Source of the DNA: Podarcis muralis
Taxonomy: Eukaryota
Reading direction: 5' to 3'
Length of the DNA stretch: 64,000 nt
NCBI RefSeq assembly: GCF_964188315.1
Contig: NC_135656.1
Location: 111,042,001-111,106,000, forward strand
This document shows positions 10,492 to 51,402 of this stretch, one piece after another. The notes under the pieces were generated by a model, which was not told where the DNA came from, ran no database searches, and saw only the letters and a list, made by a program, of their open reading frames with translations. The translations under genes were made by a program, and so were the position numbers. Position 1 is the first letter of the stretch, and each line of letters starts with the position of its first letter.

Positions 10492-11988
10492 TCACCTTTC
10501 TGGACCATCGTCTGCCTGTCTGCTGTCTGAAGACTCCTCTAGAACACCAGGTGGCTCTTCTTCATCATCTTCATCTTCATCTTCATCTTCACTTGATCCA
10601 TTGGATGTTCGCTCCATTTCTTTCCCAGCCTCCTCCCGGTGTCCATGGATCAACACTTCCTCTGTTGCTGTTCCACTGGGTAAGCTCTGCCACCCAGCAT
10701 GTTCTCCTTCTTTTCCATCCCTCTCACCAGACCGTTTCCGTTTCCCACTGGTCGATAATGCTTTTGACTTAAGGGAACATTCCCTTCCTGGCGTCCTGGA
10801 ACTTTTGGACAGCCCCGTATCTGCCCTTTTCTCACGGGTAAAAGTCCTCCCTGCAAACGATGATGTTGTTTCTTCCTCCCATTTCCAAGTACTAGAGGCA
10901 AATTCTTCTAAGGCGATCACATTGGGCGGCCCTCCTCTCTTAGATCTCTTCCCATTGGACAGCACTTTGAAAGTTCTCCTTGCCTGATTGGACGGGCCCT
11001 CCTCTGCCCCTCTCCTCCCTTCCTGCTTCCTCATCCAAACTGATGGTCCTTCTTTCCCTTGTTTCGCAGAGGTCGGGCCTGTTACCCTGGAATCCGCCAG
11101 CGCCAGAACCACTTCTCTTCGGCAATGTTGATCTCCAACAACATTGAAAACAGAGATCCAGCTGTCTCCGTGCCCGGAAACCATCTTGAAGTTCTTTCCA
11201 TCGCAGTCAATGAAGATGGTGGCATTGGCCCGGTGTCGTGGAGTCAAAGCATTAAACTCCTGCAAGGCTCGCTTGAGGCAGGCCCGAAGGTCCACCGTAC
11301 ATCCTTTCAGGCCTTCCGTCTCCTTCCACACTTTAAGCAAGTTCTCAGAGGTGAGGGGCACTGCGCGGCTGTTCAACCTGTCTACGTAGATGTCCATGCA
11401 AGTAACTCGAACCCGGTACCGAGGTTGTCTATCGGAGAAAAGGATGTGGATGCGGGACTTGCCCTTCCCAGAAATGAAATCCAAGCAGGAACCTTCACAT
11501 TCAATGGTCAACTCAGCATTGCTCTTCACTGTAGGTGGCTCCTTCTCAATCTCTGTTATGGCTAGATCAAGGCAGGCCCGCAGGTCCTTTGTGACATCCC
11601 CCCACTTAAGGAGCTCCTGCCTCACCTTCTCCAAATTCTCAGAGGTCAGTGGAGCTGGGCAGAGGGACAGCCGGTCCAGGTACACCTCCAGGCTGGAGAC
11701 CTCAATGTTATAGCGGGTTTTCTTCTTTGACCAAGAGATGACTATTTTGTTCTCACCTCCACCGGAGACAAACTCCATCCTTTTCCTCCCTCTCACCTGG
11801 ACGGTCAAGGTGGCATTGTCCTGGAGGCAGCGTGGCTCACGGGGGAACTCTAGCAGGGCATGGTCTAAGCAAGCCGTCAGCATGGTGTCAGATCCCCGGT
11901 TGGCTATCTCCAAGCTCTCCTTCGCTGAGAGTAAGTTGCTGACACTCAGTGGTGCTGGAGGGATGGGCTTGGGGATGCAGGCACCCAT
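10492..11988 (-). CDS. Uncharacterised intronless 498-aa protein: MGAC N-terminus, three ~100-aa repeats, charged low-complexity tail
   Basis: 1.5-kb uninterrupted ORF. In-frame stop 18 nt upstream of the ATG. Internal repeats at aa 13-112, 113-210 and 211-~295. AATAAA on the minus strand near 10333-10338. Diverged paralogues at 19860 and 37851 keep the same motif. Confidence 0.8.
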   Translation of the reverse strand: MGACIPKPIPPAPLSVSNLLSAKESLEIANRGSDTMLTACLDHALLEFPREPRCLQDNATLTVQVRGRKRMEFVSGGGENKIVISWSKKKTRYNIEVSSLEVYLDRLSLCPAPLTSENLEKVRQELLKWGDVTKDLRACLDLAITEIEKEPPTVKSNAELTIECEGSCLDFISGKGKSRIHILFSDRQPRYRVRVTCMDIYVDRLNSRAVPLTSENLLKVWKETEGLKGCTVDLRACLKRALQEFNALTPRHRANATIFIDCDGKNFKMVSGHGDSWISVFNVVGDQHCRREVVLALADSRVTGPTSAKQGKEGPSVWMRKQEGRRGAEEGPSNQARRTFKVLSNGKRSKRGGPPNVIALEEFASSTWKWEEETTSSFAGRTFTREKRADTGLSKSSRTPGRECSLKSKALSTSGKRKRSGERDGKEGEHAGWQSLPSGTATEEVLIHGHREEAGKEMERTSNGSSEDEDEDEDDEEEPPGVLEESSDSRQADDGPER

Positions 11989-12258
11989 ACGAAGAAAGGC
12001 CAGGATCTACGGATGCAACGCCAAACATGTCTTCTCGTGCAGTGGCATCAATGGTCCTCCAAGACCTGGAGAAGAAAGCAGGCATCTCAGAATGGAATCC
12101 GTCACTGTACGGAAGTGGCAACCGGTGCCCGTTTGATAATGGTGATCATGTGCCTGGTTCCTCCAGGACAGGGACAGCCAATGTGTTGCCCTCCAGATGT
12201 TGTTGAGGGCCACAATTCGCATCAGCCCCAGCCAACATGGCCAGCCGCCAGGAATTAT

Positions 12259-12609
12259 GGTGGCGCTGTGGGTTAAACCACAGAGCCTAGGACTTGCTGA
12301 TCAGAAGGTCAGCGGTTTGAATCCCCGCAATGGGGTGAGCTCCCGTTGCTCGGTCCCTGCTCCTGCCCACCCAGCAGTTCGAAAGCACGTCAAAGTGCAA
12401 GTAGATAAATAGGTACCGCTCTGGCGGGAAGGTAAATGGCGTTTCCGTGCGCTGCTCTGGTTTCGCCAGAAGCGGCTTAGTCATGCTGGCCACATGACCC
12501 GGAAGCTGTACGCCGGCTCCCTCGGCCAATAAAGCGAGATGAGTGTCGCAACCCCAGAGTCGGCCACAACTGGACCTAATGGTCAGGGGTCCCTTTACCT
12601 TTACCTTTA
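12259..12609 (+). mobile_element. Sauria SINE
   Basis: Match to the other copies, (ACCTTT)n tail. Confidence 0.9.
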
Positions 12610-13273
12610 TGGCAAGGCTGGAGAAGAGGCCTTGCATGGGTAAACACTTAGGAAGGCTAAGAAGTTTCCTAAGAGAGTGCAAAGGTCAGCGCTGTGCAAC
12701 TGCCTGGACAATCCCTTTACATTTCCCCAGGGCAGACCTCCTCTCCCCAGGCCACAGCCCTCACCACCCCTGCTTTGCTGTCTCCTTAAGGGATGCATTC
12801 CAGGATGTTTTCGTACACAACTAGTGATGGAGGTGCTGGCTTGTCCCATGCCTAGAAAGCATGGGTCTGAGCAGTTCTCCACTTAACCCACACTTTCTAA
12901 GCACGGGTCTGAGTGGTTTCCTTCTTCCCCAGAGGAAATCTATCTGCTATTTAGTGCTAAATCAGAGCAGGTGTGGGCTTTGGTAATCTTTCATAATATG
13001 GTGCCAAAATTCCAAATGCACCTTCTCAGTTATCGATCTTCTCAGTTTCGCACCCCTTCAGCTCAGCTCCCTGTCTGGAGGAACTGCCCACGCTGCCCTA
13101 AATCTGGTGCTGTTCAGAGCAAATGCAAATCCGGAGAAAAGGTGAACTTCCGTTTGCGCCAACCGAGTGCTAAAGAGTGGTTTGATATTCAGAATGTAGC
13201 AGGCGAAGCTCGCCCTTGCATAGTGATGACTCTTAGAACCTGTGAATATATGTAACATTTACCTCTATGCAGT

Positions 13274-13638
13274 CGTAAAGGACCCCTGGACGGTTAAGTC
13301 CAGTCAAAGGCGACTATGGGGTGTAGCGCTTATCTCTGCTTTCAGGCCGAGGGAGCCGACAGAAAGCTTTCTGGGTCATGTGGCCAGCATGACTAAACCA
13401 CTTCTGGCACAATGGAACACCGTGATGGAAACCAGAGCGCACGGAAATGCCGTTTACCTTCTCGCCGGAGCGGTACCTATTTATCTACTTCCACTGGTTG
13501 CTTTCGAACTGTTAGGTTGGCAGGAGCTGGGACAGAGCAACGGGAACTCACCCCATCATGCAGATTCGAACCGCTGACCTTCCGATCGGCAAGCCCAAGA
13601 GGCTCAGTGGTTTAGACCACAGCGCCACCTGCATCCCT
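13274..13638 (-). mobile_element. Sauria SINE (diverged subfamily)
   Basis: Match to the other copies. Confidence 0.85.
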
Positions 13639-13993
13639 CTATGCAGTACATGGGCTTGTAAAAAAGCACAACAGCGTGTTGTCTCCATTGTCTTATTCAG
13701 AGTAGATCCATTGGAGTTAATGGACACGACTCAATCAAGCCCATTAATTTATTTGCATCTACTCTGAACAGGACTTACTTGAATAAAGTCCTATGCTGAC
13801 AACTCTCAGGTGCAAGGTTGCATCCTCTCTCCCCCGTGTCTCAACCTAGAAGTCCTCTGACCTGTCCATGAAGTGGCTTAGAACCTCGGTGTAGCCTACA
13901 GAAGTATGCAATGGAAGAGCAAGCGGCTTGACTTTATCAAGCCAAATGTGCGTATGAAGGGATGCTTGAGGGTTAATTGTTTCTGTCCAATTA

Positions 13994-14162
13994 CCGTATT
14001 TTTCGCTCTATAACACGCACCCGACCATAACACGCACGTAGTTTTTAGAGGAGGAAAATCCGTAGGCATGCCACCCGTAGGCATACCCTCCATAACACGC
14101 ACAGACATTTCCCCTTACTTTCTAGGAGGAAAAAAGTGAGTGTTATGGTGCAAAAAATACGG
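13994..14162. mobile_element. Tc1/mariner (pogo/Tigger-like) MITE
   Basis: TIR CCGTATTTTT, TA TSD. Confidence 0.8.
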
Positions 14163-14599
14163 TATATCAGTTGTGAACCCTTAGGAACAAGGACTGAAAG
14201 GGAAAGGAGGACAACAAGGGGTTCTTGGGCCAGAACTGAAGTCACAGGCACAGCTGAGGGTAGCTCAGGGCTGAACGTGAGATCGTGGGGAGAACGCCGC
14301 AGTCGGTAACTCGGGGAAATGAACTTACTTTTGTGTCTGGGTTCCTACTAGCATCCATGGGAGTTGGGAAGAGGACAGGAGAGAATGTGGCTTGATTCTC
14401 ATTGGTCTTTGCAGCTGTGATGTCACAGACCCATCCTTCGGAGTTCCGTTCCATCCATGTGTTCTGTAGAAGGAAGCACCAATCGCGAGCAGACGGGTCC
14501 AGAATTAGAAAGGCAAAGCTGCGAAACAGAAATGATACAAGCAAGCAAACATCCAGCTTCTGAAGCAAATTGCAAAATTTTAACAGGTCGTCCCATTAG

Positions 14600-15170
14600 A
14601 ATAATTATACAAGAGACAATGAGGCAATGAGGCTAAGGGTACATTCTGTCCTATGTGGTGGACTTGTAAAAGGGCAAAAGGGTATTGGGAAACAATTTAT
14701 AATGAATTGTGGGGGGGAAATGTTTAAAAGTACTTTTCAAAAAACAAAACAAACCAGAGTCCTTTTTGTTGGGGATAATTCAGATGGAAATTCCCAAGTG
14801 TCAGAAAAGGCTATTTATGTATGCCACTACCGCAGCCCGTGTTTTGTTAGCCCAAAAATGGAAAACGAGTGAGGTCCCAGCTAAAGAAGAATGGCAACTT
14901 AAGCTGATGGAATATGCGTAGCCTGCAGACTTAACATATAGAATAAGAGAAATAGAGGAACATACTTTTAAAGAAGATTTGCAAATGTCTATTGAATATA
15001 TGGGTGAAAATTGCATACACTTGAAAATGTTGGCAGCATTAAGATAAATTCAACAGGGTAAATAAGTTTTGATGGATGCAATAATGGAATTCTGAATGGT
15101 TTAGTTTATGTAAAATATGCAGGGATTTATGGCATGCAAAATGAACCATGGAAAGAGAAGAAGGGAAGTT
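14600..15170 (+). mobile_element. L1 LINE 3' fragment
   Basis: EIPKCQKRLFMYATTAARVLLAQKWKTSEVPAKEEWQLKLMEYA. Confidence 0.8.
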
Positions 15171-15179
15171 AAATGAATA

Positions 15180-15394
15180 CAGTGGCACCTCAGGTTAAGA
15201 ACTTAATTCATTGTGGAGGTCTGTTCTTAACCTGAAACTGTTCTTAACCTGAGGTACCACTTTAGCTAATGGGGCCTCCTACTGCAGCCGCGCGATTTCT
15301 GTTATCATCCTGAGGTAAAGTTCTTAACCTGAGGTAATATTTCTGGGTTAGCGGAGTCTGTAACCTGAAGCGTCTGTAACCCGAGGTACCAGTG
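15180..15394. mobile_element. Tc1/mariner-type MITE
   Basis: CAGTGG(C/T)ACCTC TIRs, TA TSD; same site as the copy at 32822. Confidence 0.8.
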
Positions 15395-16385
15395 TATTCT
15401 AAAATGTAAAACAAAAAAAATTATACCAAAAAATAATTATTATTATACAAGAAGGCTCGAAGGATAGAGATCCTCCAGCCTCCAGGCCAGATTTGGCCCA
15501 GGACTGGTCCCAAATTGGAACCTGAGGCAGTTTTCCCTCAGTGCATACCCCCTTGCCCCACACCTGTCATCAAATAGTGCATCCAGTGTGGGGCAAGGAG
15601 ATGGACATGCTTGGATCAGCTGCACAGCAGAATTTCACGCGAGGAAGCCAGTTGCCCTGGAGGAAGCAGCTTTGGCTTGGTGCCTGGAAAGTGCCGAGTG
15701 GGTCGGTGAGCATTTGGGAAGCATGGTGCAAAAGTGCTTTGCAAGCCCAACGCTCAGCACTTTCTAAGCTTCCTGCTGAGCAAAGGGCCATCGGAAACCC
15801 TCTGCAATGCGGCTCCCAAGGACCCGAAAAGCTGCCGTCCGTCGGGTGCTCAGGAAGTAGCGCACAAGGGACATTGGCAGGTAGGCGGAATAACCCATTC
15901 AAGGGGCCTTATTCTTGACTGGAGATCCTGCTGGCAATTTGTGTACAGTGGTACCTCAGGTTGAGCAATCTGGTGGAGAAGGCATGGAGCGTTGCCTCTC
16001 TCCCCTGACAGGCCATTTGCTTTCCATGCAGAATGCACTGAAAAGAGCCCCATTCCCCCCCCCCCCCAACATCCATCATAAACACGCAGCAGGTTAGTGG
16101 GCTGAACTCACAGGTTGCTGCATTCTTCTGTGTCCTGCTCAGAGCTGTAGCGGGGGGAGGGCAGGTCTAGCCTGGATTTCTGCCCCAGGTGAAGCCTCCA
16201 GAGGGGTGCCATTGAGTTTCCCACCAGATTGATTATGGGATCCTGGGATCTATGGTCCCAAAAACAGACGTCTGGGAGAACAGAAGTATCCAGGATCCCC
16301 CATGCTTCCTTTGAAAAAAAAAAAAGACGATTGTCCAGTAGCACCTTAGAGATCAACTAAGTTTGTCCGGGTATATTTGTTCTTT

Positions 16386-16585: not shown

Positions 16586-19169
16586 TTGAAACCAGGGATG
16601 GGTGGGGAAGGAACTGAATCCCCCCCATACTTCCCTCCCTCAAACATCTGGGGAAAGAACTTTTTTTGGGGGGGCGGAGTATGTGTGGTGTGGAAAGGGC
16701 TCAGGATATTAAGTCCCTGCCCTAAACTGCCAACTTCTTTAGAGGGAATTAGTAACAGTCTGACTCTGACACACAGTGTCATTGCTGTCAATTCTGAAAG
16801 GGCCCTGCAGGCTCTCTCTTCCAAAGAGCGCTCTGTCCTGGGAAGCCAAACACATGAACACTGCCATAAACCCACAGCTTCGGGGGTGGGGCAGCTTAAC
16901 AGGGGAGGCTTTTGAATGAGGAACTGGCATGAGGCCCCAAACCAGATTGACTGCTTGTTCCGGATCACAACCCCATAGCTGTATTTTATTCAGAACAGAA
17001 ACACACAAAATAGAAGCACAGTTAAAGAGGAATAGTCTGCAAATACATGATACACAAATAGAGACTTGATATGGGGGCATATAAATGATTCCCTGTTATC
17101 TCCAGATATGGATAATTTAATGTGCTTCAAATAGTTGTTCTGTTTCCTTTTATAATTGTTTAATTGTCGTCACTCACTCTAGGACCTGATGTCGAAAGGT
17201 GTGTGAGAAACCTTGTAAATAAATAAAAGTAATTCCGCTTACTGCATTTGTTGGTGCCATTAATCGCTTAATATCCAAGCTGCTATGGGGATTTGCAGAA
17301 CCACTGTTAAATATCTCTTGTTTGGACCAGTGGAGGACAAGGTGCTCAAGTCTGCTCTTATATTGTAACTCTTAAACTGCTGTTGCTTTCTTTGAGTCTT
17401 TAATATATGAAATAAACAAGGGCTGCAGGGAGGAAGTGGGGAGCTGTGGTCTGAACCAGCAGGAATCTTCTGAAAGTATGTGCTTTTAAATGAAATAAAA
17501 ATGAAAACTATTCCTCTGTTTGAAATGACTGGCTTCAGATTTAACATTTCCCAACATGATGCACATTGATGGGAGGCAGAGGCGGGGAGCCTTTTGCAGC
17601 CCAGATGCTGCATTGTGTCTGGAGTTTGAAAAATATTGGCCCCACCCCATGGGGTGACAGATGGTTGGGACAATCACATAATATCACTATGAAATTACAT
17701 GATTGACAGATGAGTTCCCTACCCATGCCTTATGGGGAACATTTGAAATAACTTGTACTGGGGATAGATAGGACCGGTAGCAAAAGTGAGCAGAGTTCCT
17801 GCTATGCTCTTCATCCACACAAGCAAGAGAGATTATCCCTGTCCAAGGATAGATTTTCATCACAAGTGCATGCAAGGGATCAGTGAGGCCTATATCCTTG
17901 AAGGGCCATTAGAATATTGTTCTCTATATGATCCCAAAAACTGTTTAAGGCATTTTCTCCTCTCTCATATGTTATCCCAAAGGGGGGGGGGCAGCCAGAA
18001 GAACAAGGCTTTTTCTTGCTTAGATGTTACAGTGAAAATAGGCCTATCTCAGGAATGTCTGGCTTGGCCGAGTAAAAATAAAGAGCAAGGTTGAATGGAT
18101 ATTATTGTCACCCCAGAGGGAGGGACTGGACATACGTGAAACAAGGAAGTCCAAATATGGAGAAACGAAAGCTAAATTCTATACCATTTCCCGTGAATCA
18201 CATGTTTTCTTGTAAATCAGATGGAAGACCGTCACAGGGGATATAAAAAGGGCTGGCAACCCCAGAGAGGGCGGGCAGGCAATGAACTTTACCTTGTCTG
18301 TACCTTTTTTGTCATGACAAAATAAAAATGATTTTACTGCTGTCAAATTGACTCTTTGAAACGAATTCTGATGCTCCAAAGGGGAGGAACTAAGGAAAGG
18401 TCTTTCATCCTGACGGCCATTTTGAGGGGCCTGCATCATTTGGCTCCTGCAGCTGAGGTTTTCCAACCCTAGTGGAAGCTTGAGCTTTTTATTATTATTA
18501 TTATTGCGTGAAAACATTTATTTCAGTAAGCCCGCATAGGCACTTCTTTAATTGTGTACACTTGCTTTTAAATTCTTGCAGATTTTACCTGTGTTTTTAT
18601 TGAAAATCATACTATTTTTGTACATACAGCTTAGTTTTTTTTAATTATCTGGTTTCTAAACATTTCCAAATAAACAAAAACAACAACAATGAAACAATAT
18701 TTCAATAACATTTCTTAAAAACAAAACTATGCATCAAATAAAACTGAGAAGTGTACAGAACAGAAAATTTAAAAAATTAGGAGCCAGAATCTAGCAAAAC
18801 CTAGGTAAACATGTAAGTTTTTAAGAGGAAACATGTAAGTTTGGGTAAACATGTAAGTTTGGAAATCTCTACTGTCTCCATCTCATGAATTATTTGAGAG
18901 AGAGCATTCCAGAGGGTGGGTGCTGTACCCACAAATGAAGTTACCACCCATTGGTGTTGGAGTTACCCCAGAAGGGCCTCATCAGCTTGAGCTCTTACTG
19001 CTGAAATTTGACTCTCGTTTAACCCAATTTCAAGGGACCAGTTCAAATTTGATCCGAGGAGCAACTGGTATTTTTATCATACAAAACGTACCTGCTTATT
19101 CACATCTTCCTGGTCTGACAACAGGGTAAGCGAATGGGATTCTGGCTAACCCTTCTCATGGTTCATGTA

Positions 19170-19524
19170 CAGTGGTGCCTCGCAAGACGAAATTAATTCG
19201 TTCCGCGAGTTTTGTCGTCTTGCGATTTTTTTCGTCTTGCGAAGCACGGTGTCGGGAAAGTTTTGGAAAAGCTTAAAAAATCACCAAAGTCTTTAAAAAC
19301 CTCAAAAAAGGCTACCACACCGCGTTCTATGAGTTGCTCCTCGAAGTCAAGTCGCAACTGTATTAACGGTGTTAAGAAAAAGGAAAGAAACTTGCAAGAC
19401 GTTTCCGTCTTGCGAAGCAAGCCCATAGGGAAAATCGTCTTGCGAAGCAGCTCAAAAAACAAAAAACCCTTTCGTCTAGCGAGTTTCTTGTCTTGCGAGG
19501 CATTTGTCTTGCGAGGTACCACTG
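19170..19524. mobile_element. Tc1/mariner-type MITE (GCAAGACG subfamily)
   Basis: TIR CAGTGGT(G/A)CCTCGCAAGAC, TA TSD. Confidence 0.85.
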
Positions 19525-19859
19525 TACTTTGTAAACAGCAGCGAAGGAACCGTATGTAAACTCAAACATGGCAGGTTTCCATCACATTTTGGTCTTGTTT
19601 GTTTTTTGGGGGAAGTTCCCACACACTGAAATTTACTGGTAAGTTCAATTCCATTTGCTTTCTATTGTTAACACCTGCAGGAAAGCTAAATACAGATCAC
19701 CACAGTAACATGCAAAACATGTGTTCCTATACCACATCCTCCAGCAATTCATACCTGCTTCAGCTGAGCTGGAGATCAGCAGTCCTCTTGAATCAGGCCA
19801 GAGATTCATCAAATATACCCTCAACAGGCTGGTAATAATTTAGGGGCATTCTTAGTGAG

Positions 19860-20299
19860 ATGGATTGGCTTATTGTGGGAAAGTTTCTGGGTCAAGAACT
19901 CTTGTTTAAAAGTCTCTGCTATCAGATCCAGAGAGAAACACACCCACTGAGCATGGAGTCTCTGAGATCTGTGCAGAAACGATTGCAGGGTTATGAGCCA
20001 GACACAAGGAATGAGCCAGACACAATGAGGAATTTCAAGCAGGAGCCCACATGCGTGAAGGAGAATGCCACTTTGTTGATCAAGAGTGATGGGGTCGAGT
20101 TGAAATTCTCCTGTGGGAATCAGAAATGTCTCATCTGCATAGATGACGCTGGCGGAGAACTCCAGTACAATGCCTCTGAGCTCTCAGGGGATGTTTATTT
20201 GTCAAGATTACATTGCAGGCCCCAGCCACTGAATGTGGCAAGTCTCCAGGGAGTGAAGGAAAGTTTGGAGAAATGGGAGATGGGAGAAGATTTGAGAAG
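19860..20299 (+). pseudogene. Truncated paralogue of the 100-aa-repeat protein (X3)
   Basis: HPLSMESLRSVQKRLQGYE...NFKQEPTCVKENATLLIKSDG...PLNVASLQGVKESLEKWEMGEDLR. The LVACLDMAL helix is replaced by a short local duplication (GAGCCAGACACAA twice), and homology stops abruptly at 20299. Confidence 0.8.
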
Positions 20300-20630
20300 T
20301 TCAACACACACCACAATTGCCTCATTACGTAAATCCTGTTCAGAATACCACAACACACACGTAACTGGCTGTAAAGTAACATAAGATTGTATATAATAAA
20401 ACTGTAATCATCATATAAAAAAATTGCAAAGCACAGTTCCTGGTGGCAAGAACGTATCATATTACTATTAACCTTCTATATGTTTTTATTGTCGTAAAGT
20501 CCAAGGACAGTCAAGTCCAAAGATTGTCAAGTCCAACGATTACAATGTACAGTTCCTGTTGGCAATGCTATTTCATACTGATATCTTCCTTCTGCAGTCC
20601 TATGTCTTGAGAGTGTAACAAGCAGAACTA

Positions 20631-20995
20631 GTAAAGGTAAAGGTAAAGGTAAAGGGACCCCTGACCATTAGGTCCAGTTGTGGCCGACTCTGGGGTTGTG
20701 GCACTCATCTTGCTTTATTGGCCAAGGAAGCTAGTGTACAGCTTCCGGGTCATGTGGCCAGCAAGACTAAGCTGCTTCTGGCAAACCAGAGCAGTGCACG
20801 GAAACGCCGTTTACCTTCCCGCCGGAGTGGTACCTATTTATCTACTTGCACTTTGAGGTGCTTTCGAACTGCTAGGTTGGCAGGAGCAGGGACCAAGCAA
20901 TGGGAGTTCACCCCGTTGCGGGGATTCGAACCACCGACCTTCTGATCAGCAAGTCCCAGGCTCTGTGGTTTAACCCACAGCGCCACCCGCGTCCC
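20631..20995 (-). mobile_element. Sauria SINE
   Basis: Match to the other copies. Confidence 0.9.
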
Positions 20996-22484
20996 ACGAG
21001 CAGAACTACTTAGTAACAATAAGGCAGCTGATGATAGACCAGTTCTCAGGATACACCCTTGTTTTGCCCATTGGGCTTCTTCGGCGACAAGGTTTCCAGG
21101 AGAATTTTCAGTAGGTTTTTCCAGCCGAAATAGTACACAGGAACGCAGAAGTTGTCAGTCAGAGATGCTCCGTATCAATGATCATTGAAACTAAGCTATA
21201 TAGGAGGAATCCCTGCAATGGGGCAGGTGCAGGCAATTAGAATTAAATATTCTTAAACAAAATCAATAAATCTAACCCCTAAAAGGGGAAAGGGGGAAAT
21301 GAGGTGTGTTATTGTTTGTAGAGAAGTGACAGTATGTGGAGGAATTAAGGAACAAAGAGAAGCAGGAAATGTAAATAAGTGAACAAGCGAGGGCATTTGG
21401 ACAGAGCAGATCCACCATCTCCATATCACCAAAAACAATAGGTCAGAAATTTAAATGAAAACGTACATGAAAGTCAGAGATGCATTAGCTGAGAGTCTTA
21501 CGACTAGATGACGCTTGGGATCCCTTCCATCTCTACAATTCTGTCATTCTTTGTGCTCATTTGTACGTGGAGACAGCAAATTTTAAAATACTCAGTACAA
21601 TTGAAATAGAAATACAGTCCATCTTACTGCATCAGGGGGAAAGACTGTGTCTTCCTGCTCAGTATGCTGACTGGATGCTAACTGTGAACACGGGCAGCGC
21701 CAGGGTGCCAACTGCTCTCCCTTCTCAGGGCTCTTTATCCTTAAACCCAACTTGGATTGGATGCTCCTTCAGATACAGACAGTGTGGTATAGTGGTTACA
21801 GCACTGGACCAGGATGGGGAGTTCAGGGCAGACACACACAATAAAAACACATGAAATCATAAACTTAAGCAAACACTCATGTGGTTTTGCTTTTCTTTCT
21901 TTGGGCTTATTTACTTTAATTATATTTTGATCTAAAAGCCTAATCATAGCAGCTACAGTGTCCCAGCTGTGGCAAATTCAAAAGTAAAAGTTAGTTGTCC
22001 CCAAATCCTATTAACATTTGGGACTGGAGCAACAGTGTTTGCATGAAGAAACTGTATGAGAACTGGGGGTGGGAGACAGGAAACCAATTCTTCCCTCACT
22101 AATTCCTTCTCGAGTAAACAATTGTTTTTCTCAGTCTTTACTTCCTTTTCCCTCCTGCTCCAGTCAGTTCGTATTTGACCTTTTATTAGCCTCATGATGG
22201 CCACACGGCTCTCGCTCAATTTTTCCTGGGGACTGTAAGGTTAGTTAAGGGTGCTGGAAAATGTAGCTTTTTGAGGTAAATAGCCATTGCCAAGATTCTT
22301 TGGCAGACACCATGCACTTTGAATTCATGGTACGGATGTGAAGCTGCACACTGTGAGGGTTTCTCCTGGTTTACGCTGCTGCTTTGCAAACACTATGAGC
22401 CACCCAGAGGCAGAGCCACCCAACCTTGGACTTTAAACTGGAAAAATGAAACTAAGGCTTTTATTCCCGTTTCAGGCAGACGAA

Positions 22485-23919
22485 ATGGCAGACGAGAGTC
22501 CAGTCCAGAACCTCTGCGAGGAAACGACATGCCGCATCTGCTGGGAGTATTTCAAAGACCCAGTGATCATAGAATGCGGCCACAATTTCTGCCAAAGCTG
22601 CATCACCCAGGCTTGGGGAAACTCGGACCAAGATGCTTCTTGCCCTCAGTGCAGGGAACCTTGTCAGCAAAGGAATGTCAGGCCCAACCGGCAACTGGCC
22701 AGCATTGTGGAAATAGTCAAGAAATTCAGCCTTCAGATGGCCAGAGGGGCGGAAGCACTGGGAAGGGTTTGTGAGAGACAGCAGGAGCCCCTGAAACTCT
22801 TCGGCGAAGGCGACCAAGCCCCCATCTGTATGGTGTGCGACAAATCCAAGGAGCACAGGGACCACAAGGTGATCCCAAAGGAGGAGGCCTTTGATGAGTA
22901 TCAGGTAGGGAGCTGTAGGATGGGGACCAGAATTCCAAGGGATGCTCAGTTATCCTAAGGATGGGGAAAATATTTCACCCTGAGGGCTGCATTTTTCTCT
23001 AGGTGACATTCAGGTGGGTGTTTTCAGGGGTGCAGGAAGGGGGCGGAGGTGCAGGTGGGTGGGCCGCTCCAAGTGCCCTCACTGAGGGGGGTGACATTTG
23101 GTGCACCGCCTGCCCGTGACCCCCAAGCCTACTCCGAGCCGTTGGGGTAACGAAGGGAGCTACGCCGCTCTGCCGGCAGGATTCCCCCCTTTTCCCTTCA
23201 TTTTGCCAGCTTGGGGGAGGCTTGGGAGTTTTGAGCGGGTGACGCGCCAAATGTCCACCATGGGGGGCTCATTCCGCCCCCGTGCAAAGAAGTAATACAG
23301 ACAAAAAAATAATGGCAAGATGAATTATTTGACTATGTAGAATTGGCCAGAAGGACAGATGCAATTAAAGGTCAGACCAAACGAAAATTCCAAAAAGAAT
23401 GGAGAAAATATAGAGATTACCTTTAAAAAAAAGTGCCCTCAAATTAATCCTTGGACTTGTTTTGATTAACTTTTGCAAAACATACTATGGGGTAAAAGGT
23501 AAAAACCAGAAAGAAGAAGGGGTAAAAATGAAAAGAGAAGGAAACAGTTTGCTAAATATGAAAGTAGAACCGTGCTGAGGATGAAGGAAGTCAATTGGAA
23601 GAAAAGAAGAACTGAAATATTGTACATACAAATTGTTTAATATTTGCTTAGTATAAGTTTTTGTATTTACCTTTGATGTTCTTTGTTCTTTTTTTCTTTA
23701 TATTTTATGTTTTCTTTCTTTTTTCTTTTTCTTTTTGTTAGTGTGTGTGTGTTGCAAAATTTAAATTAAAATTTATTTCAAAAAAGAAAAAAGAAAACGT
23801 GGTTCTTTTTTGGTGGGTATGGGGTTGTTTTTATTTTGATTATATATTTTGTGGTTTTATATTCTGATTTTGTTCTGTGAACTGCCCTGAGATCTTCAGG
23901 TATAGGGCAGTATATGAAT

Positions 23920-36856: not shown

Positions 36857-37110
36857 CTTCTTCTTCTTTGGTGATCACTCATAGCCGAGTAAGATTGTCT
36901 TCCATAAAAACGGTTTTAACAATGAGTCCGTAAGTGACTGTGGAGGCCGATTCTGGATCCACACGTCCTTCCACAGTGGGGACATTGGTTTCCGGGCGGG
37001 AGTTGATCACGGTGGTAGCGTGGGTAGGGCTGGTAGCGTTGGAGATGGCGTCCTCGTGCCTGCCTGCTTTGAACCCCTTTCCTGTGCCTTGGAGCTGGAC
37101 GGCTGCATCT
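36857..37110 (-). mobile_element. RTE-clade LINE 3' fragment
   Basis: Encodes DQLPPGNQCPHCGRTCGSRIGLHSHLRTH, the C2H2 finger typical of RTE ORF ends, and has an (AAG)n tail near 36857-36868. The 5' boundary is approximate. Confidence 0.75.
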
Positions 37111-37960
37111 GTAGGATATTTCCCCACCGACACAGGAGACATCGATGCAATTCTCTCTGGTCCCAGAGATTAGCTCCATCTCCCCTCCTTCCACTTCAAT
37201 CACCATGCGGGCATTCTTCTTCACATCCTCCGGTTCCTGGCAGAACCTGTGCAAGGCAATATTAAGGCTCTTCCGGACATCAGGAGGCGTCCCTGCTAGG
37301 GATCTCACTGTTCTACGGATGCTTTCCAAATTCTTGGCATTCAGGTGCTCCTTGTGGAGTGGTAGCCGTTCCCGGTACATTTCCCAGGTCTTCGGTTCAA
37401 CCTCATAATGAGGTTCCCCCTTGTCAAAACACACCAATATCTCACATTGCCCCATCCCAGAGATGAACTCCAGTTGAACTTTGCGTTTCCTAATGATCAA
37501 CCGGGCATTTTCCTGCACTAATAAGGGTTCCTTAGGGAACTCCTTCAGGGCTAGCTTGAGACATCTTCTCAAATGTTCTCCCATCTCCCATTTCTCCAAA
37601 CTTTCCTTCACTCCCTGGAGACTTGCCACATTCAGTGGCTGGGGCCTGCAACATAATCTTGACAGATAGACATCCCCTGAGAGCTCAGAGGCATTGTACT
37701 GGAGTTCTCCGCCAGCGTCATCTATGCAGATGAGACATTTCTGATTCCCACAGGAGAATTTCAACTCGACCCCATCACTCTTGATCAACAAAGTGGCATT
37801 CTCCTTCACGCATGTAGGCTCCTGCTTGAAATTCCTCAGCGCCATGTCCAAGCATGCGACCAGATTCCTTGTGTCTCACTCATAACCCTGCAACTGTTTC
37901 TGCACAGATCTCAGAGACTCCATGCTCAGTGGGTGAGTTACTCTCTGGATCTGATAGCAG
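36916..37960 (-). pseudogene. Paralogue X2 of the 100-aa-repeat protein: three repeats, in-frame TGA upstream of Met 37851, C-terminus fused to an RTE fragment
   Basis: THPLSMESLRSVQKQLQGYE*DTRNLVACLDMALRNFKQEP... then two more repeats. The ORF from 37851 is 311 aa and open into the RTE zinc finger. Confidence 0.7.
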
Positions 37961-38403
37961 AGATATTTAAACCACAGTTTTTCTCCCACACGAAGCCAAT
38001 CCATCTCTTTAATCCAATCCATCTCTTTAAGAAAAGGAGCCTACTTTCCTTTAAGAATGCCCTCAAATTACCAGTCAGTCGCCTGTTGAGGGTATCTTTG
38101 ATGGATCTCCGGCCTGATTCAGGAGGACCGCTGATCGCCAGCTCAGCTGAAGCAAGTATGAACTGTTGGAGGACGTGGCAAAGGAACATGACTCTTGTTT
38201 TGCATGTTACTGTGGTGATCTGTATTTAGCTTTCCCACAGGTGTTAACAATAGAAAGCAAATGGAATGGAACTTAAATTTCAATGTGTGGGAACTTCCCC
38301 CAAAACAAACAAGACTAGAATGTGACAGAAGTCTGCCCTGTTTGAGTCTACATACTGTTCCTTCACTGTTGTTTACAAAGTACAGTGGTTTGTAAACTGA
38401 ATA

Positions 38404-38677
38404 CAGTGGTACCTCTGGTTACAAACTTAATTTGTTCCGGAGGTCCGTTCTTAAGCCGAAACTGCTCATAACCGCTCATTAGCTTTCGCTAATGGCGCCT
38501 CCCACTGCTGCCATGCTGCCGGTGTGCGACTTCCACTCGCATCCCGGGGCATAATTTGCAACTGGGAGCATCTACTTCCGGGTTAACGGAACTCGTAACC
38601 CGAAGTGTTTGCAAGGAGGACGGTACATAACACAAGTTTCCACTGTAGTTCGTAAAGAGGGCTGTTCTTAAACTGAG
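38404..38677. mobile_element. Tc1/mariner-type MITE with truncated right TIR
   Basis: CAGTGGTACCTC start, GAGGTAC end. Confidence 0.7.
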
Positions 38678-40262
38678 GTACATGAACCATGAGAAGGGTG
38701 AGCCAGAGTCCCATCCACCTGCCCTGTTGTCAGACCAGGAAGATGTGAATAAGCAGCTACATTTTGTATGATAAAAAATACCAGTTGTTCCTCGGATGAA
38801 ATGTGAACTGGTCCCTTGGAATTGGGTGAAATGAGAGACAAAATTCAGCAGTAAGAGCTCAAGCTTATGAAGCCCTGCTGCGGTCACTCCAACACCCATG
38901 GGTGGTCACTTCATTTGTGGGTGCAGCACCCACCCTCTGGAATGCTCTCTCTCAGATAATTCATGAGATGGAGACAGTAGATATTTCCAAACATCCCGTA
39001 AAAACTTAAATGTTTACCCAGGTTTTGATAGATTCTGGCTCCTAATTGTTTTTAAATTTTCTGTTCTGTACACTTCTCAGTTTTATATGATGTATAGTTT
39101 ACTTTTGTTTTTAAGAAATGTTATTGAAATATTGTTGTATCATTGTCACTTTTGTTTATTTGGAAATGTTTGGAAACCAGTTCAGGTTTTTTTAAAAAAA
39201 AACAACTAAGCTGTGGTACAAGAATAGTATAAATGGTTTTCAATAAAAACACAGGTAAGATCTGCAAAAGTTTAAAGGCAAGTGTACACAATTAAAGAAG
39301 TGTCTCTGTGGGTTTACTGAAATAAATGTTTTCACGCAATAATAATAAAAAAAGAGCTCAAGCTCCCACTAGGGTTGGAAAACCTCAGCTGCAGGAGCCA
39401 AATGATGCAGGCCCCTCAAAATGGCCGTCAGGATACAGGCCTCTGGTCCCTTGCATGCACTTCTGACTAAAATCTGTCCTTGGACCGTGATAATATCTCT
39501 TGCTTGTGTGGATGGAGAACATAGCAGGAACTCTGCTCACTTTTGCTACTGGTCCTATCTATCCACAGCGCAAGTTATTTCAAATGTTTCCCATAAGGCA
39601 TGGGTAGGGAACTCATCTGTCAATCGTGTAATTTCATAGTGATATTATGTGATTGTCCCATCCATCAAATTTCACCCATGGGGTGGGGCCAAATTTTTTC
39701 AAACTCCAGACACAATGCAGCATCTGGGCTGCAAAAGGCTCCCCACATGTGCCTCACATCAACATGGGTCATGTTGGGAAATGTTAAATCTGAAGCCAGT
39801 CATTTCAAACATAGAGTAATTGTTTTGATTTTTATCTCACTTAAAAGCGCATACTTTCAGAAGACCCCTGCTGGTTCAGACCACAGCTCCCACTTCCTGG
39901 ATCAATGGAGCCCTTGTTTATTTCATATATTAAAGACTCAAATAAAGCAACAGCAGTTTAAGAGTAATAATATAAGAGCAGACATGAGCACCTTGTCCTC
40001 CACTGGTTCAGACTAGAGATACTTAACTGCAGTTCTGCAAATCCCCTTGTTGTAAGCAAAAAATGGCTTATCTTCTGAGTTTACGCCAATAAAACTCAGA
40101 GGCAAGAGGTGTTAAGAGTCCATTGTTGTTTACTGCAAAGCAATAGGTTACAGTCGAATCTTTTCGCAAAACTGCAACCCCGCCCAAGGGTCAGGGCAGT
40201 GGTATTTATAACATTTCAAACAAAGGATTTCAATTTTCACCAATCTTCGATACCTCCCTCTC

Positions 40263-41030
40263 TATGGAGGCACAGATTACAGCTATAACAAAGGCGGCAT
40301 TTTTTCATCTCCGCCAAGCTAAGCAGTTGGCTCCTTATCTCTCTCGCCCTGACCTAGCCACTGTGATCCACGCGACGGTCACCTCCAGACTGGATTATTG
40401 TAACTCACTCTACGTGGGGCTGCCCTTGAGACTGACCCAGAAACTCCAGCGGGTGCAGAATGCCGCGGCGAGACTCCTTATGGGGTCTTCGCTGCGAGAT
40501 CATATCCATCCGGTACTATACCAGCTGCACTGGCTCCCGGTGGAGTACAGGATCAGGTTTAAGGTGCTGGTTTTAACCTTTAAAGCCCTATACGGCCTAG
40601 GACCCTCGTACCTACGGGACCGCCTCTCCTGGTATGTCCCACAGAGAAATTTACGGTCTGCAAATAAAAACATCCTAAAGATCCCAGGCCACAGAGAGGT
40701 TAGGCTGGCCTCAACTAGAGCCAGGGCTTTCTCGGCTGCGGCTCCAATCTGGTGGAACGCTCTGTCACAAGAGACTAGGGCCCTGCAGGACCTGACATCC
40801 TTCCGCAGGGCCTGCAAGACAGAGCTGTTCCACCAGGCCTTTGGTCAGGGCGCAGCCTGACCCCCTCCTCTGGCAATCTGCACAGAATTTTGCTTGATGG
40901 TTGCCATTAATTTGATTTTAATTTGATTTAATTAATTTTATAATGAATGTTTTTAGAATGTTGGACTATTTTGATTGTTGTTAGCCGCCCTGAGCCCAGC
41001 TTCGGCTGGGGAGGGCGGGATATAAATAAA

Positions 41031-41063
<33 letters not shown>
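40263..41063 (+). mobile_element. Young L2 LINE 3' fragment
   Basis: Open 198-aa frame (TSRLDYCNSLYVGLP...LQRVQNAAARLL...LHWLPVEYRIRFKVL), 3' UTR and (ATT)n tail. Absent from the paralogous segment near 17360-17300. Confidence 0.92.
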
Positions 41064-42208
41064 CATGTACATCATTACCTCATTTCATGTTTAATACACA
41101 TGCGCAATAAGCATTGCTAACTAAACTTTGATTCTCACTGTGCTCTGTTACATTGTGTTAGTATGCATGTTGGGAAGCTGTGTTACATGCAGCCATTTGC
41201 ACCGTGTATCAACTTGCGTTCTAACTTATGAGCTTCATCTTTGTGATTCACACATTGGCTGCCCTTCTGTCCCAGTGGGGGACGGCATCTTGCAAAATCC
41301 TCAGTTTCTTAAAGCAACAGGTTACCATAACTTCTCTATTAGAAGCATATTGAAGGATTTATAGGGGTTCACATTATCACATTCATTATGGCCCTTTGGG
41401 CCACTACCACACCCTGAGCAGCTTGGACATTAAGCGATTAATGGCACGCACAAATGCAGTAAGCGGAATTGCTTTTATTTATTTACAAGGTTTCTTACAT
41501 ACCTTTCGACATCAGGTCCTAGAGTGAGTGACAACAACTAAACAATTATAAAAAGACATAGAACAACTACTTGAAGCACATAAACAACCCACCTCTTTAG
41601 ATAATTAAGGGGGCATTTAAATGCCCCCATATCAAGTCTCTATTTGTGTGTCATGTATTTGCAGACAATTCCTTTTTAATCATGCTTCTATTTTGTGTGT
41701 TTCTGTTCTGAATAAAATATAGCCATGGGGTTGTGATCCGAAGCACGCTGCCAATCTGGATCAGGGCCTCATGCCAGTTCCTCGTTGAAAAGCCTCTCCT
41801 CTTCAGCTACTATTTCCCCCTGAAGCTGTGTCTGAATGGCAGTTTTCATGTGTTTTGTTTCCCACAACAGAACGCTATTTGGAGGAGAAAGCCTGCAGGG
41901 CCCATTCAGACTTGACAGCAATAATACTGCATGATAGAGTCAGACTGTTACTAATTCCCTCTAAAGAAGTTGGCAGTTTGGGGCAGGGACTTAATATCCT
42001 GAGCCCTTTCCACACCACACATACCCGCCCCCCAAAAAAGTTCTTTCCCCAGATGTTTGGGGGAGGAAAGTATGGGTGGGGAGAGGATTCAGTTCCTTCC
42101 TCCTGACCCCCCACACTGTTTTTTTAAACTTCCCCACCCATCCCTGGTTTTAAAGGACTTGGCACCTCCCGCTGGCCTGTCAAGTTTGCACCAAATGGCA
42201 ACCTCATC

Positions 42209-50902: not shown

Positions 50903-51402
50903 TTCGTTTGCCTGAAATGAGAACAAAAGCTTTAGTTTCCTTTCTCCAGTTTCAAGTTACAGGGCGGGCCTTTCCCTCCCCCTGGGTGACTCATAGTTTT
51001 TGAAAAGAAACAGCATAAGCTGGGGGAAACCGTTACAGTGTGCAGCTTTACATCTGTACCATGAATGCAAAGCGCACGGTGTCTGCCAAAGAATCCTGGC
51101 AATGGCCGTTCACCCCAAAAAGCTACACTTCCCAGCACCCTTAACTAACTACAGTCCCCAGGAAAAATTATGGGAGAGCCATGTGGCCATCATGATGCTA
51201 GTAAAAGGTCAAATAATAACTGACAGGAGCAGGAAGAAAAAGGAAGTAAAGACTGAGAAAAACAATTGTTTACTCGAGAAGGAATCAGTGAGGGAAGAAT
51301 TGGTTTCCTGTCTCCCACCCCAAGTTCTCAGACAGTTTCTTCTTGCAAACACTGTTGCTCCAGTCCCAAATGTTAACAGGATTTGGCGACAACTATGATG
51401 AA

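What the first reader, a model, noticed from the sequence alone, without database searches (positions are those of the whole stretch)
10492..11988. Unrecognised triple-repeat, putatively lipid-anchored protein inside an immune gene cluster
Seen: an intronless 498-aa ORF starting MGAC (Gly2, Cys4), with three repeats of 100, 98 and about 85 aa. Shared pattern: PL-x3-NL-x2-V...L-x-ACL-x2-A[LI]-x-E...EP...NA-x-L-x-I...G...F-x-SG-x-G...I-x-I...Y...Y-x-x-RL. This pattern recurs in two far-diverged paralogues in the window, so it looks like a folded alpha/beta domain under selection. I cannot match it to any family I know. Inference: a myristoylated or palmitoylated membrane-associated protein family evolving by birth and death alongside antiviral-type TRIMs, possibly an undescribed innate-immunity component. 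This is the best novelty candidate in the window.
Basis: partly seen in the sequence, partly recalled or inferred. Interest (0 to 1): 0.85.

Follow-up and report, generated by a model that had tools for sequence, protein, structure and literature searches.

The report
Undescribed membrane-tethered repeat protein of lizards
This is a real, expressed wall-lizard gene, kept nearly unchanged in all lizards and snakes, whose protein has a likely fat-anchor signal at its start and three copies of a folded module that matches no described protein family or solved structure; what it does is unknown.

Summary
Window 10492-11988 (-) is an intact 498-aa ORF, already listed as Podarcis muralis 'uncharacterized protein LOC114592018'. 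It starts MGACIPK and has three ~98-aa repeats and a 200-aa disordered tail.

It is a two-exon gene with a conserved non-coding first exon, a single coding exon and a polyA signal. RNA-run contigs cover it. One-to-one orthologues exist in every major squamate lineage: 71-87% identity, no indels in residues 1-298, dN/dS 0.14-0.16.

Membrane tethering recurs across the family as transmembrane helices, signal peptides or MG-x-C starts. A turtle relative starts MGGCVPK and its close kin MGGCASK.

The immune, TRIM-linked, birth-and-death reading is not supported for this gene. Five other squamates have no TRIM exon within 10 kb. The window's two paralogues are broken copies.

The scan noted a likely relative 3.7 Mb away (s1-189843).

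The parts
10492..11988 (-). Complete coding sequence, 498 codons plus TGA stop; = P. muralis LOC114592018
   Evidence: identical protein P0001/P0002
11968..11988 (-). N-terminal MGACIPK (Gly2, Cys4, Ile5, Pro6, Lys7): putative N-myristoylation / S-palmitoylation signal
   Evidence: Identical in all 13 orthologues that have a complete N-terminus. Turtle P0131 has MGGCVPK and P0060 has MGGCASK. Pro6 is non-canonical (PMC5170614).
11659..11958 (-). Repeat 1 (aa 11-110)
11365..11658 (-). Repeat 2 (aa 111-208)
11095..11364 (-). Repeat 3 (aa 209-298). The most conserved repeat; its last helix is replaced by a strand.
   Evidence: dN/dS 0.09-0.16; long stem in the repeat tree
10495..11094 (-). Disordered Ser/Glu/Gly/Arg/Lys-rich tail (aa 299-498). 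Conserved islands: GKEGP, AEEGPS, a basic K[RK]x[KR][KR] cluster, EEVLIHG, and an acidic C-terminus ending DDGPER.
   Evidence: Composition: 70% disorder-promoting residues. Conserved islands and conserved stop position. dN/dS 0.34-0.56.
11989..12065 (-). 5' leader within exon 2, with conserved upstream ATGs at -60 and -40. The splice acceptor AG is at 12066-12067.
   Evidence: RNA-run contig X6 ends at 12065 with 164 further letters. The sequence and acceptor are conserved in six squamates. uATG analysis.
12066..14328 (-). Intron 1 (GT at 14328-14327, AG at 12067-12066); contains a SINE at about 12259-12610
14329..14484 (-). Conserved block holding non-coding exon 1 and probably the core promoter. 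It has a CCAAT motif, a TGACATCA motif, an upstream ATG in the context CCCATGG, and a GTAAGT donor.
   Evidence: 75-83% identical to the block upstream of the orthologue in five other squamates. The exact transcription start was not determined.
10315..10491 (-). 3' UTR with AATAAA at 10332-10337. Cross-species similarity ends at about 10313-10316.
37093..37935 (-). Disrupted three-repeat paralogue. It has an in-frame stop at 37876-37878 and its reading frame runs on into a LINE-derived tail (36916-37092). It is 66% identical to the intact 380-aa protein P0030.
19860..20384 (+). Truncated copy (about 1.3 repeats) of the same paralogue lineage, inside an inverted segmental duplication that also carries TRIM exons

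Best explanation
The stretch is the single coding exon of a real, transcribed, two-exon gene that all lizards and snakes keep as a one-to-one orthologue.

Shown:
- The protein has no signal peptide or transmembrane helix.
- It starts with an invariant MGACIPK.
- It carries three tandem copies of a ~98-aa alpha/beta module (helix, helix, short helix, four-strand antiparallel meander, helix) that belongs to no described sequence family and has no convincing neighbour among solved or predicted structures.
- It ends in a 200-aa disordered tail with a few conserved short motifs.
- The module defines a small family that is found mainly in non-avian reptiles and is also detectable in a hemichordate, corals, molluscs and an eel.

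Inferred:
- After Met removal, Gly2 is myristoylated and/or Cys4 is palmitoylated. This pins the protein to the cytosolic face of a membrane.
- There the three rigidly packed modules act as binding surfaces and the tail recruits or regulates partners, that is, a membrane-tethered scaffold or adaptor. Repeat 3 is the most constrained module.
- Conserved upstream ATGs, one of which overlaps the main start codon in all six species, suggest that translation is normally throttled.

Confidence in the descriptive part (real gene, new module family) is about 0.9. Confidence in the lipid-anchored scaffold mechanism is about 0.45.
For: Gene reality:
- The ORF is intact.
- RNA-run contigs cover 10600-12065. 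One contig stops exactly after the AG acceptor at 12065 and carries 164 more letters.
- The exon-1 block, donor, acceptor and leader are conserved in six squamates.
- There is a polyA signal.

Conservation:
- 20 orthologous clusters, 71-87% identical, 484-509 aa, with no indels in residues 1-298.
- dN/dS is 0.14-0.16 in the repeats and 0.34-0.56 in the tail.
- Each repeat is monophyletic across squamates with 100/100 support.

New module:
- Pfam: none for the protein or for 64 family members.
- PDB sequence and profile searches: none.
- Models: pLDDT 88 with pTM 0.76, and pLDDT 84.6.
- Foldseek against PDB: best E 0.29-0.34.
- Swiss-Prot AFDB: E >= 0.12. Atlas: TM < 0.5. BFVD: nothing.
- The only fold hits are uncharacterised reptile, coral, oyster and scallop proteins.
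- The profile search of 1.84 billion representatives gives 74 hits. All 30 looked up are unnamed or misnamed.

Membrane theme:
- Relatives carry one or two transmembrane helices, signal peptides, or the starts MGGCASK, MGNCWCSC and MGQTNGK.
- Turtle P0131 starts MGGCVPK and its 55%-identical relative starts MGGCASK.
- A hydrophobic residue 5 and Lys7 suit N-myristoyltransferase (PMC5170614, PMC7048800).

Translation control: uATGs at -60 (5 of 6 species) and at -40 (6 of 6 species).
Against: - Lipidation is not demonstrated, and Pro at position 6 departs from the Ser/Thr preference of N-myristoyltransferase (PMC5170614).
- Part of the family looks extracytosolic. Single-pass members have a more positive N-flank, 1.1-3.1 N-glycosylation sequons per 100 aa, and exactly two Cys per repeat spaced C-x24-C. 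A shared cytosolic scaffold role for the module therefore cannot be assumed.
- No partner, ligand or phenotype is known.
- Two raw RNA-seq runs (about 12% of each run was read) showed no reads on the ORF, so expression is low or tissue-restricted.
- The runs that hold the ORF are only guessed to be RNA.
- The structure is a prediction, and the tool's notes say that a weak or missing fold match does not prove a new fold.
Confidence: 0.5

Rival explanations
1. One reading: the protein is an innate-immunity component that evolves by birth and death together with the neighbouring antiviral-type TRIM genes.
For: - In this window the gene lies beside three TRIM genes.
- Its paralogue lineage was duplicated together with TRIM exons (scan note s1-181841).
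- The wider family shows lineage-specific expansion and variable repeat number: 1-20 repeats, an alligator tandem cluster, and Ig V-set-like exons nearby in alligator.
- The Anolis orthologue neighbours a Ly6/uPAR gene.
- uORF-gated translation is compatible with stress or infection induction.
Against: - This gene is a stable single orthologue with dN/dS about 0.15 and no length change over the squamate radiation. That is unlike fast-evolving restriction factors.
- No TRIM exon lies within 10 kb of it in five other squamates.
- No family member carries a RING, B30.2, death-fold, TIR or other immune domain.
- No expression data under infection were available.
Confidence: 0.15
2. The protein is a soluble cytosolic or nuclear protein. 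The N-terminus is conserved for another reason (for example N-terminal acetylation, a degron, or a binding motif), and the basic clusters in the tail act as nuclear localisation signals.
For: - Pro6 violates the usual myristoylation pattern (PMC5170614).
- The tail holds a conserved K[RK]x[KR][KR] cluster.
- Many multi-repeat turtle relatives have no anchor of any kind.
Against: - Gly2 and Cys4 are invariant, with a hydrophobic residue 5 and Lys7.
- The same MG[AG]C[IV]PK in a turtle relative is replaced by the canonical MGGCASK in that relative's close kin.
- Membrane anchors of some kind recur in the family.
Confidence: 0.2
3. The module is a small-molecule-binding, lipid-binding or catalytic domain. 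It would use its conserved pole (Glu40-Pro41, Gln45, Asn47, Ser63-Gly64-x-Gly66 in repeat numbering) and the nearly invariant Cys29, rather than acting as a passive interaction module.
For:
- Cys29 is present in 74 of 87 repeats.
- The weak top structural neighbours include REDD1 and SCP2-type alpha/beta sandwiches.
Against: - There is no conserved His/Asp partner for the Cys.
- Arrays of 2-20 linker-less copies are more typical of structural or binding modules.
- In the transmembrane-type members, Cys29 pairs with Cys54 in number, which looks like a disulfide.
Confidence: 0.1
4. It is not a functional host gene: a chance ORF, a pseudogene, or a transposon-borne ORF.
For: - The coding sequence lies in a single exon.
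- The phyletic distribution of the family is patchy.
- Broken paralogues lie beside transposon debris in the window.
Against: - The position, promoter/exon-1 block and splice sites are conserved in six squamates.
- Purifying selection acts on it.
- RNA contigs cover it.
- No transposase or reverse-transcriptase domain is present.
Confidence: 0.02

Closest known systems
Uncharacterised sauropsid proteins with the same module, e.g. Anolis carolinensis LOC100554454, Chrysemys picta LOC135974678 (20 repeats), Pelodiscus LOC142825960 (13 repeats), Alligator LOC106737987, Thamnophis LOC116502908
   Same: They share the same ~98-aa module (profile E down to 0), tandem linker-less arrays, and mostly single-exon coding sequences.
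   Different: - Identity to the window's protein is only 30-41%.
- Repeat number ranges from 1 to 20.
- Many carry transmembrane helices or signal peptides in place of the MG-x-C start.
- None has a described function or name.
Dual-acylated peripheral membrane proteins with an SH4-type N-terminus (Src-family kinases, G-alpha i/o) and acylated repeat-only scaffolds such as apicomplexan ARO (PMC13432881)
   Same: - A Met-Gly start with a nearby Cys, a hydrophobic residue 5 and Lys7.
- In ARO, a repeat-only body is held on a membrane by N-terminal acylation and recruits a partner.
- This is what the lizard protein most plausibly works like.
   Different: - There is no sequence or fold relationship.
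- Position 6 is Pro instead of Ser/Thr/Cys.
- Acylation is untested.
GAP43 / MARCKS / BASP1 class (PMC6478813)
   Same: An N-terminal fatty-acid modification combined with a long, charged, intrinsically disordered region that holds basic clusters.
   Different: - Those proteins are almost wholly disordered, whereas this one has 290 residues of folded repeats.
- Its basic clusters are far from the N-terminus.
- There is no homology.
REDD1/DDIT4 alpha/beta sandwich (PDB 3lq9), the best solved-structure neighbour
   Same: Two helices packed on a four-stranded sheet. 78 of 98 residues align at 3.6 A. It recurs in the Foldseek lists.
   Different: - From my own knowledge, REDD1 has a mixed sheet with a psi-loop, not a simple meander.
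- There is no sequence similarity.

Membership tests
N-myristoylated / dual-acylated (SH4-type) proteins | Gly at position 2 after the initiator Met, with no in-frame upstream start | tested here: met
   MGACIPK is identical in all 13 orthologues with a complete N-terminus. An in-frame stop lies 18-21 nt upstream in five of six species, and the leader holds only short uORFs.
N-myristoylated / dual-acylated (SH4-type) proteins | Small uncharged residue at position 3; Ser/Thr (or Ala/Gly/Cys/Asn) at position 6; not Pro at position 7 (PROSITE PS00008 pattern, recalled from my own knowledge; Ser/Thr6 preference in PMC5170614) | tested here: not met
   Ala3 fits and Lys7 fits (PMC7048800), but position 6 is Pro. 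Mitigating evidence: turtle P0131 has the same MGGCVPK and its relative P0060 has the canonical MGGCASK.
N-myristoylated / dual-acylated (SH4-type) proteins | Cys within the first few residues, available for S-palmitoylation | tested here: met
   Cys4 is present in all 13 orthologues with a complete N-terminus.
N-myristoylated / dual-acylated (SH4-type) proteins | Demonstrated lipid attachment and membrane localisation | not testable with these tools
   Needs metabolic labelling and imaging.
TRIM / RBCC proteins (the neighbours) | RING, B-box, coiled coil, PRY/SPRY | tested here: not met
   No Pfam domain in the ORF at E <= 1. The neighbouring ORFs do carry them.
Any Pfam-A family or solved structure | Significant sequence or profile match | tested here: not met
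   The only hits are sub-threshold HAUS1 (27 bits against a cut-off of 40) in two snake orthologues and PP1_inhibitor in turtles, both below the gathering score.
REDD1 / SCP2 / other known alpha/beta sandwiches | Fold match well above background | tested here: not met
   [not shown]
Transposable-element proteins | Reverse transcriptase, transposase, gag or envelope domains; multi-copy dispersed insertion; no conserved synteny | tested here: not met
   No such domains. The orthologous locus has conserved upstream exon and splice sites in six species.
The undescribed ~98-aa repeat family itself | The motif P-x-P-L-S..L..V..L...L..C[FL]..A...F..EP..VQ.NA.L.I.C.G..L.F.SG.GE..I.V....G...Y.V and the helix-helix-helix-strand x4-helix topology | tested here: met
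   All three repeats match the profile over 86-97 of its 98 positions. The consensus is, and the topology.

The most novel reading that the evidence does not exclude
The ~98-aa repeat is a new protein fold. It founds a metazoan family of membrane-tethered modules used on both faces of the membrane, expanded in non-avian reptiles and apparently absent from birds and mammals. The squamate three-repeat gene is a dual-acylated, uORF-gated signalling scaffold that is switched on under stress or infection and works with the neighbouring TRIM ligases.
Probability: 0.12. Interest if true: 0.8.

Novelty: categorically new. Interest (0 to 1): 0.6.

Why it matters
If the predictions hold, this is a folded, strongly conserved protein module that no domain database or solved structure covers. 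It occurs in every lizard and snake examined, and in arrays of up to 20 copies in turtles. No bird or mammal turned up among the relatives that could be traced.

It offers several things to follow up:
- a candidate new fold for structural work;
- a clean test case for a non-canonical (Pro6) acylation signal that appears interchangeable with a canonical one in close relatives;
- a reptile-centred gene family whose members sit on either side of membranes and expand by lineage, a pattern often seen in host-environment or immune interfaces.

The gene models already sit in public databases as 'uncharacterized protein'. What is new is recognising the module, its family, its membrane theme and the gene's tight regulation. 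No function has been shown.

Tried and rejected
- Pfam scans of the ORF, orthologues, paralogues, 64 family members, hemichordate multi-repeat proteins and a 5774-aa metagenomic hit gave nothing shared. They returned only scattered sub-threshold or repeat-inflated hits: HAUS1, PP1_inhibitor, Rdx, DUF2786 and others.
- One old alligator model with Ig V-set domains (P0111) is probably a fused gene model. Its own Ig exons are not in the locus; only similar ones are.
- PDB sequence and profile searches returned noise only, e.g. sigma-54 and RACK1 at E >= 0.14.
- ESM Atlas feature searches scored at most 0.61 and were uninformative.
- Fold searches in six libraries found no characterised neighbour.
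- Two bacterial hits in the profile search (P0084, P0094) match only 30-40 profile positions and carry unrelated domains. I treated them as spurious.
- A second word-indexed protein search with a diverse alignment returned the same 23 proteins and added nothing on taxonomic range.
- Literature searches for the LOC identifiers and for descriptive terms found no paper on this gene or family.
- A C29-C54 disulfide as a family-wide feature is rejected: 35 of 87 repeats keep C29 alone. It may hold in the transmembrane-type subgroup.
- TRIM synteny is rejected at the +-10 kb scale. Larger scales could not be examined.
Full report
**1. The observation**

The window holds an uninterrupted 498-codon ORF at 10492-11988 on the minus strand, starting MGACIPK. 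Residues 11-110, 111-208 and 209-298 are mutually similar. BLASTP gives E 1.8e-21, 4.6e-17 and 1e-7, at 35-38% identity. The triple repeat is therefore real and not a chance pattern.

tblastn of the repeat region against the window finds two more related stretches, at 37093-37935 (-) and about 20034-20333 (+), 33-38% identical.

- The first has an in-frame stop (37876-37878). Its frame then runs into a LINE-type C2H2-like tail.
- The second breaks off after about 1.3 repeats.
- They are two copies, about 86% identical in DNA, of one paralogue lineage. They lie inside an inverted segmental duplication that also carries TRIM exons.

Pfam confirms the TRIM neighbourhood: three RING/B-box first exons and three PRY/SPRY or SPRY last exons.

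**2. It is a real gene**

The protein is identical to Podarcis muralis 'uncharacterized protein LOC114592018'.

Transcript evidence:
- Contigs assembled from runs classed as RNA cover 10600-11831 and 11009-12065.
- One contig stops aligning exactly at 12065, the first base after an AG, and carries 164 further letters. That is the signature of a spliced upstream exon.
- Two raw-read RNA runs (about 12% of each read) had no reads on the ORF, so expression is low or tissue-restricted.

Gene structure:
- A 155-170-nt block 2.3 kb upstream (14318-14484) is 75-83% identical to a block 2-9.5 kb upstream of the orthologue in Anolis, Crotalus, Hemicordylus, Paroedura and Rhineura. It ends in a conserved GTAAGT donor at 14328.
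- The acceptor and the 77-nt leader in exon 2 are conserved as well.
- An AATAAA signal lies 157 nt after the stop, where cross-species similarity ends.
- The gene therefore has a non-coding exon 1, a 2.26-kb intron holding a SINE, and one exon with the whole coding sequence.

**3. Conservation**

- Orthologues were found in lacertids, an amphisbaenian, a cordylid, iguanians, a varanid, geckos and snakes. They are 71-87% identical over residues 1-300 and 484-509 aa long.
- There is not a single indel in residues 1-298. MGACIPK is identical in all 13 aligned orthologues that have a complete N-terminus. The stop position is conserved in 12 of the 14 aligned sequences, which end ...DDGPER or a close variant.
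- Pairwise Nei-Gojobori dN/dS among Podarcis, Anolis and Crotalus is 0.14-0.16 for the repeats, 0.09-0.16 for repeat 3, and 0.34-0.56 for the tail, with dS about 0.6-1.5.
- In a tree of repeats, each of the three repeats is monophyletic across squamates (100/100). Repeat 3 sits on the longest stem with the shortest tips. The triplication therefore predates the squamate crown, and repeat 3 acquired a specialised, tightly constrained role.
- This is a stable orthologue, not a birth-and-death locus.

**4. What the module is**

Searches that found nothing:
- No Pfam family matches the protein at E <= 1, its orthologues at E <= 10, or 64 family members at E <= 0.001.
- No PDB sequence matches the protein or an 87-repeat profile.

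Predicted structure:
- AlphaFold2 gives confident models: three repeats at pLDDT 88.0 and pTM 0.76, and a single repeat at pLDDT 84.6.
- Both show the same topology: helix, helix, short helix, four antiparallel strands, helix.
- In repeat 3 the last helix is replaced by a strand.

Fold comparisons:
- Foldseek finds nothing in the PDB (best E 0.29-0.34).
- Swiss-Prot AFDB: E >= 0.12. BFVD: best E 0.037 with TM <= 0.3. ESM Atlas: TM < 0.5.
- The only confident fold hits are uncharacterised proteins: lizard, snake, alligator and turtle, then a coral (E 7e-8), oyster, scallop, a gorgonian and a ciliate.

I therefore treat the module as undescribed. The caveat is that both sides are predictions, and a missing match does not prove a new fold.

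**5. The family**

A 25-repeat profile searched with HMMER against 1.84 billion cluster representatives finds 74 proteins at E <= 0.001 and 35 at E <= 1e-30.

The 30 representatives that could be looked up are all 'uncharacterized' or carry obviously transferred names:
- turtles: Chrysemys with 20 repeats in 1934 aa, Pelodiscus with 13, Platysternon with 10;
- sea turtles;
- alligators, with four members on one 207-kb scaffold;
- Anolis, Thamnophis, Naja, Pogona and Phrynocephalus;
- the hemichordate Ptychodera;
- a conger eel.

No bird, mammal or amphibian was among them. The remaining 44 could not be traced.

Other family features:
- No accessory domain is shared.
- The 20-repeat turtle protein is encoded by one 5.8-kb exon.
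- The Anolis paralogue LOC100554454 lies about 60 kb from the Anolis orthologue on the same chromosome.
- Positions conserved across the family are hydrophobic core positions plus a polar set: Glu40-Pro41, Gln45, Asn47-Ala48, Ser63-Gly64-x-Gly66-Glu67, Tyr81 and Cys29 (74 of 87 repeats).
- From the strand order, the polar set should cluster at one end of the sheet.

**6. Membrane theme and topology**

Twenty-one family members have strongly hydrophobic segments.

- Single-pass members from snakes and crocodilians have a transmembrane helix before two repeats. Nearly all have a more positively charged N-flank. They carry 1.1-3.1 N-x-S/T sequons per 100 residues in the repeats, and most have exactly two Cys per repeat, spaced C-x24-C. 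This predicts type II proteins with the repeats outside the cytosol.
- Turtle and alligator two-helix members bracket the repeats between helices, with basic termini.
- Three members start with signal-peptide-like segments.
- Members without hydrophobic segments have almost no sequons and 3-4 Cys per repeat. Several of them start with Met-Gly: MGGCASK (P0060), MGNCWCSC (P0063) and MGQTNGK (P0028).

The window's protein belongs to the last group.

The turtle protein P0131 (Mauremys) starts MGGCVPK, which is the same G-small-C-aliphatic-P-K pattern as MGACIPK. Its 55%-identical relative P0060 has the canonical MGGCASK. Two inferences follow from this:
- the motif is probably older than the squamate-turtle split;
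- Pro6 and Ser6 versions substitute for each other in close relatives.

This is the best available argument that MGACIPK is an acylation signal.

Evidence on the enzyme's preferences cuts both ways. N-myristoyltransferase prefers Ser/Thr at position 6, while a large hydrophobic residue 5 and Lys7 are favourable (PMC5170614, PMC7048800).

**7. Mechanism**

The best-supported reading has four steps:
- after Met removal, Gly2 and/or Cys4 are acylated;
- the protein sits on the cytosolic face of a membrane;
- the three tightly packed modules present binding surfaces;
- the disordered tail mediates regulated interactions. It is 70% disorder-promoting residues and has conserved islands GKEGP, AEEGPS, a basic cluster, EEVLIHG and an acidic end.

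The leader has conserved upstream ATGs. One is in exon 1. One at -60 opens a 13-codon uORF in five of six species. One at -40, with A at -3, overlaps the main ATG out of frame in all six species. The main ATG itself has a weak -3 base. Translation is therefore probably held low and may be conditionally released.

All of section 7 is inference. Nothing here shows a partner, a ligand or a phenotype.

**8. The immune / TRIM idea**

In five other squamates no TRIM RING, coiled-coil or SPRY exon lies within 10 kb of the orthologue. The same holds around the Anolis paralogue.

The Anolis neighbour is a Ly6/uPAR gene. An alligator paralogue neighbours a carboxylesterase, and another has Ig V-set-like exons upstream.

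The family's lineage-specific expansions and membrane display are compatible with a role at a host-environment interface. For this particular gene the evidence is neutral to negative. I put that reading at about 0.15.

**9. Comparison and novelty**

- What it most plausibly works like: dual-acylated peripheral membrane scaffolds, such as SH4-type N-termini, the acylated repeat-only protein ARO of apicomplexans (PMC13432881), or the acylated, disordered GAP43/MARCKS/BASP1 class (PMC6478813).
- It is not a member of any of these by sequence or fold, and it misses one defining feature of the canonical myristoylation motif.
- Its true relatives are only unnamed proteins. No paper mentions the LOC identifiers.
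- The scan has a first-stage note (s1-189843) on a 'type II membrane protein with a tandem Cys-x24-Cys domain' 3.7 Mb away in the same genome. From the spacing and topology it is probably a transmembrane-type member of this family. I did not examine that locus.

**10. Verdict**

- Observation: confirmed.
- Interpretation: partly supported. The new folded module and the likely membrane tether hold. The TRIM-coupled birth-and-death and immune role are not supported for this gene.
- Novelty: an undescribed domain family and possibly a new fold, in gene models that databases already list as uncharacterised.
- Interest: 0.6.

Noticed in passing
window 11989-12065 and 14329-14484 (-): The 5' leader is about as conserved across six squamates as the coding sequence. 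It holds three conserved upstream ATGs. One is in exon 1 (context CCCATGG). One at -60 opens a 13-codon uORF in 5 of 6 species. One at -40 overlaps the main start out of frame in 6 of 6 species. This suggests uORF-gated translation.
   Followed up: partly
window 12259-12610: A SINE in intron 1 attracts enormous RNA-read and contig depth, with many variant letters and loose ends at its borders. These are reads from copies genome-wide, not from this locus.
   Followed up: no
window 12841-12870: A 30-nt island is covered by 127-260 RNA reads in two runs. Consistent loose ends on both sides (agreement 0.93-0.99) suggest a short match to an abundant transcript encoded elsewhere.
   Followed up: no
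window 36916-37092 (-): The disrupted paralogue's frame continues into a LINE-type C-terminal tail (...CPHCGRTCGSRIGLHSHLRTHC, a weak C2H2 hit). A retroelement insertion truncated the third repeat's end.
   Followed up: partly
window 17000-23018 versus 37565-54780: An inverted segmental duplication (85-92% identity, in pieces) carries the TRIM 5' exon, the paralogue and flanking sequence. The TRIM-plus-paralogue unit was copied as a block.
   Followed up: partly
window 4292-4786 (+), 40264-40860 (+), 49587-50084 (-): Three ORFs share a conserved motif (LDYCN..Y.GLP...Q.VQN.AARL....HI.PVL..LHWLP). The two scanned (4292-4786 and 40264-40860) have no Pfam match. They are presumably a repeated element's ORF.
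   Followed up: no
L009 (Chrysemys picta) 10001-15805 and 16919-17758: A 20-repeat, 1934-aa member is encoded by a single 5.8-kb exon. Further repeats of the same module lie 1.1 kb downstream.
   Followed up: no
L001 (Anolis) 16904-21518; L008 (Alligator) 3411-3748; L004 (Alligator) 19080-21607: Neighbours of family members elsewhere: a Ly6/uPAR gene next to the Anolis orthologue, Ig V-set-like exons upstream of an alligator member, and a carboxylesterase next to another alligator member.
   Followed up: no
window 10457-10987 (+): A 176-aa antisense ORF rich in Ser runs opposite the tail-coding region. It is most likely a by-product of the tail's Glu/Asp-rich codons, not a gene.
   Followed up: no
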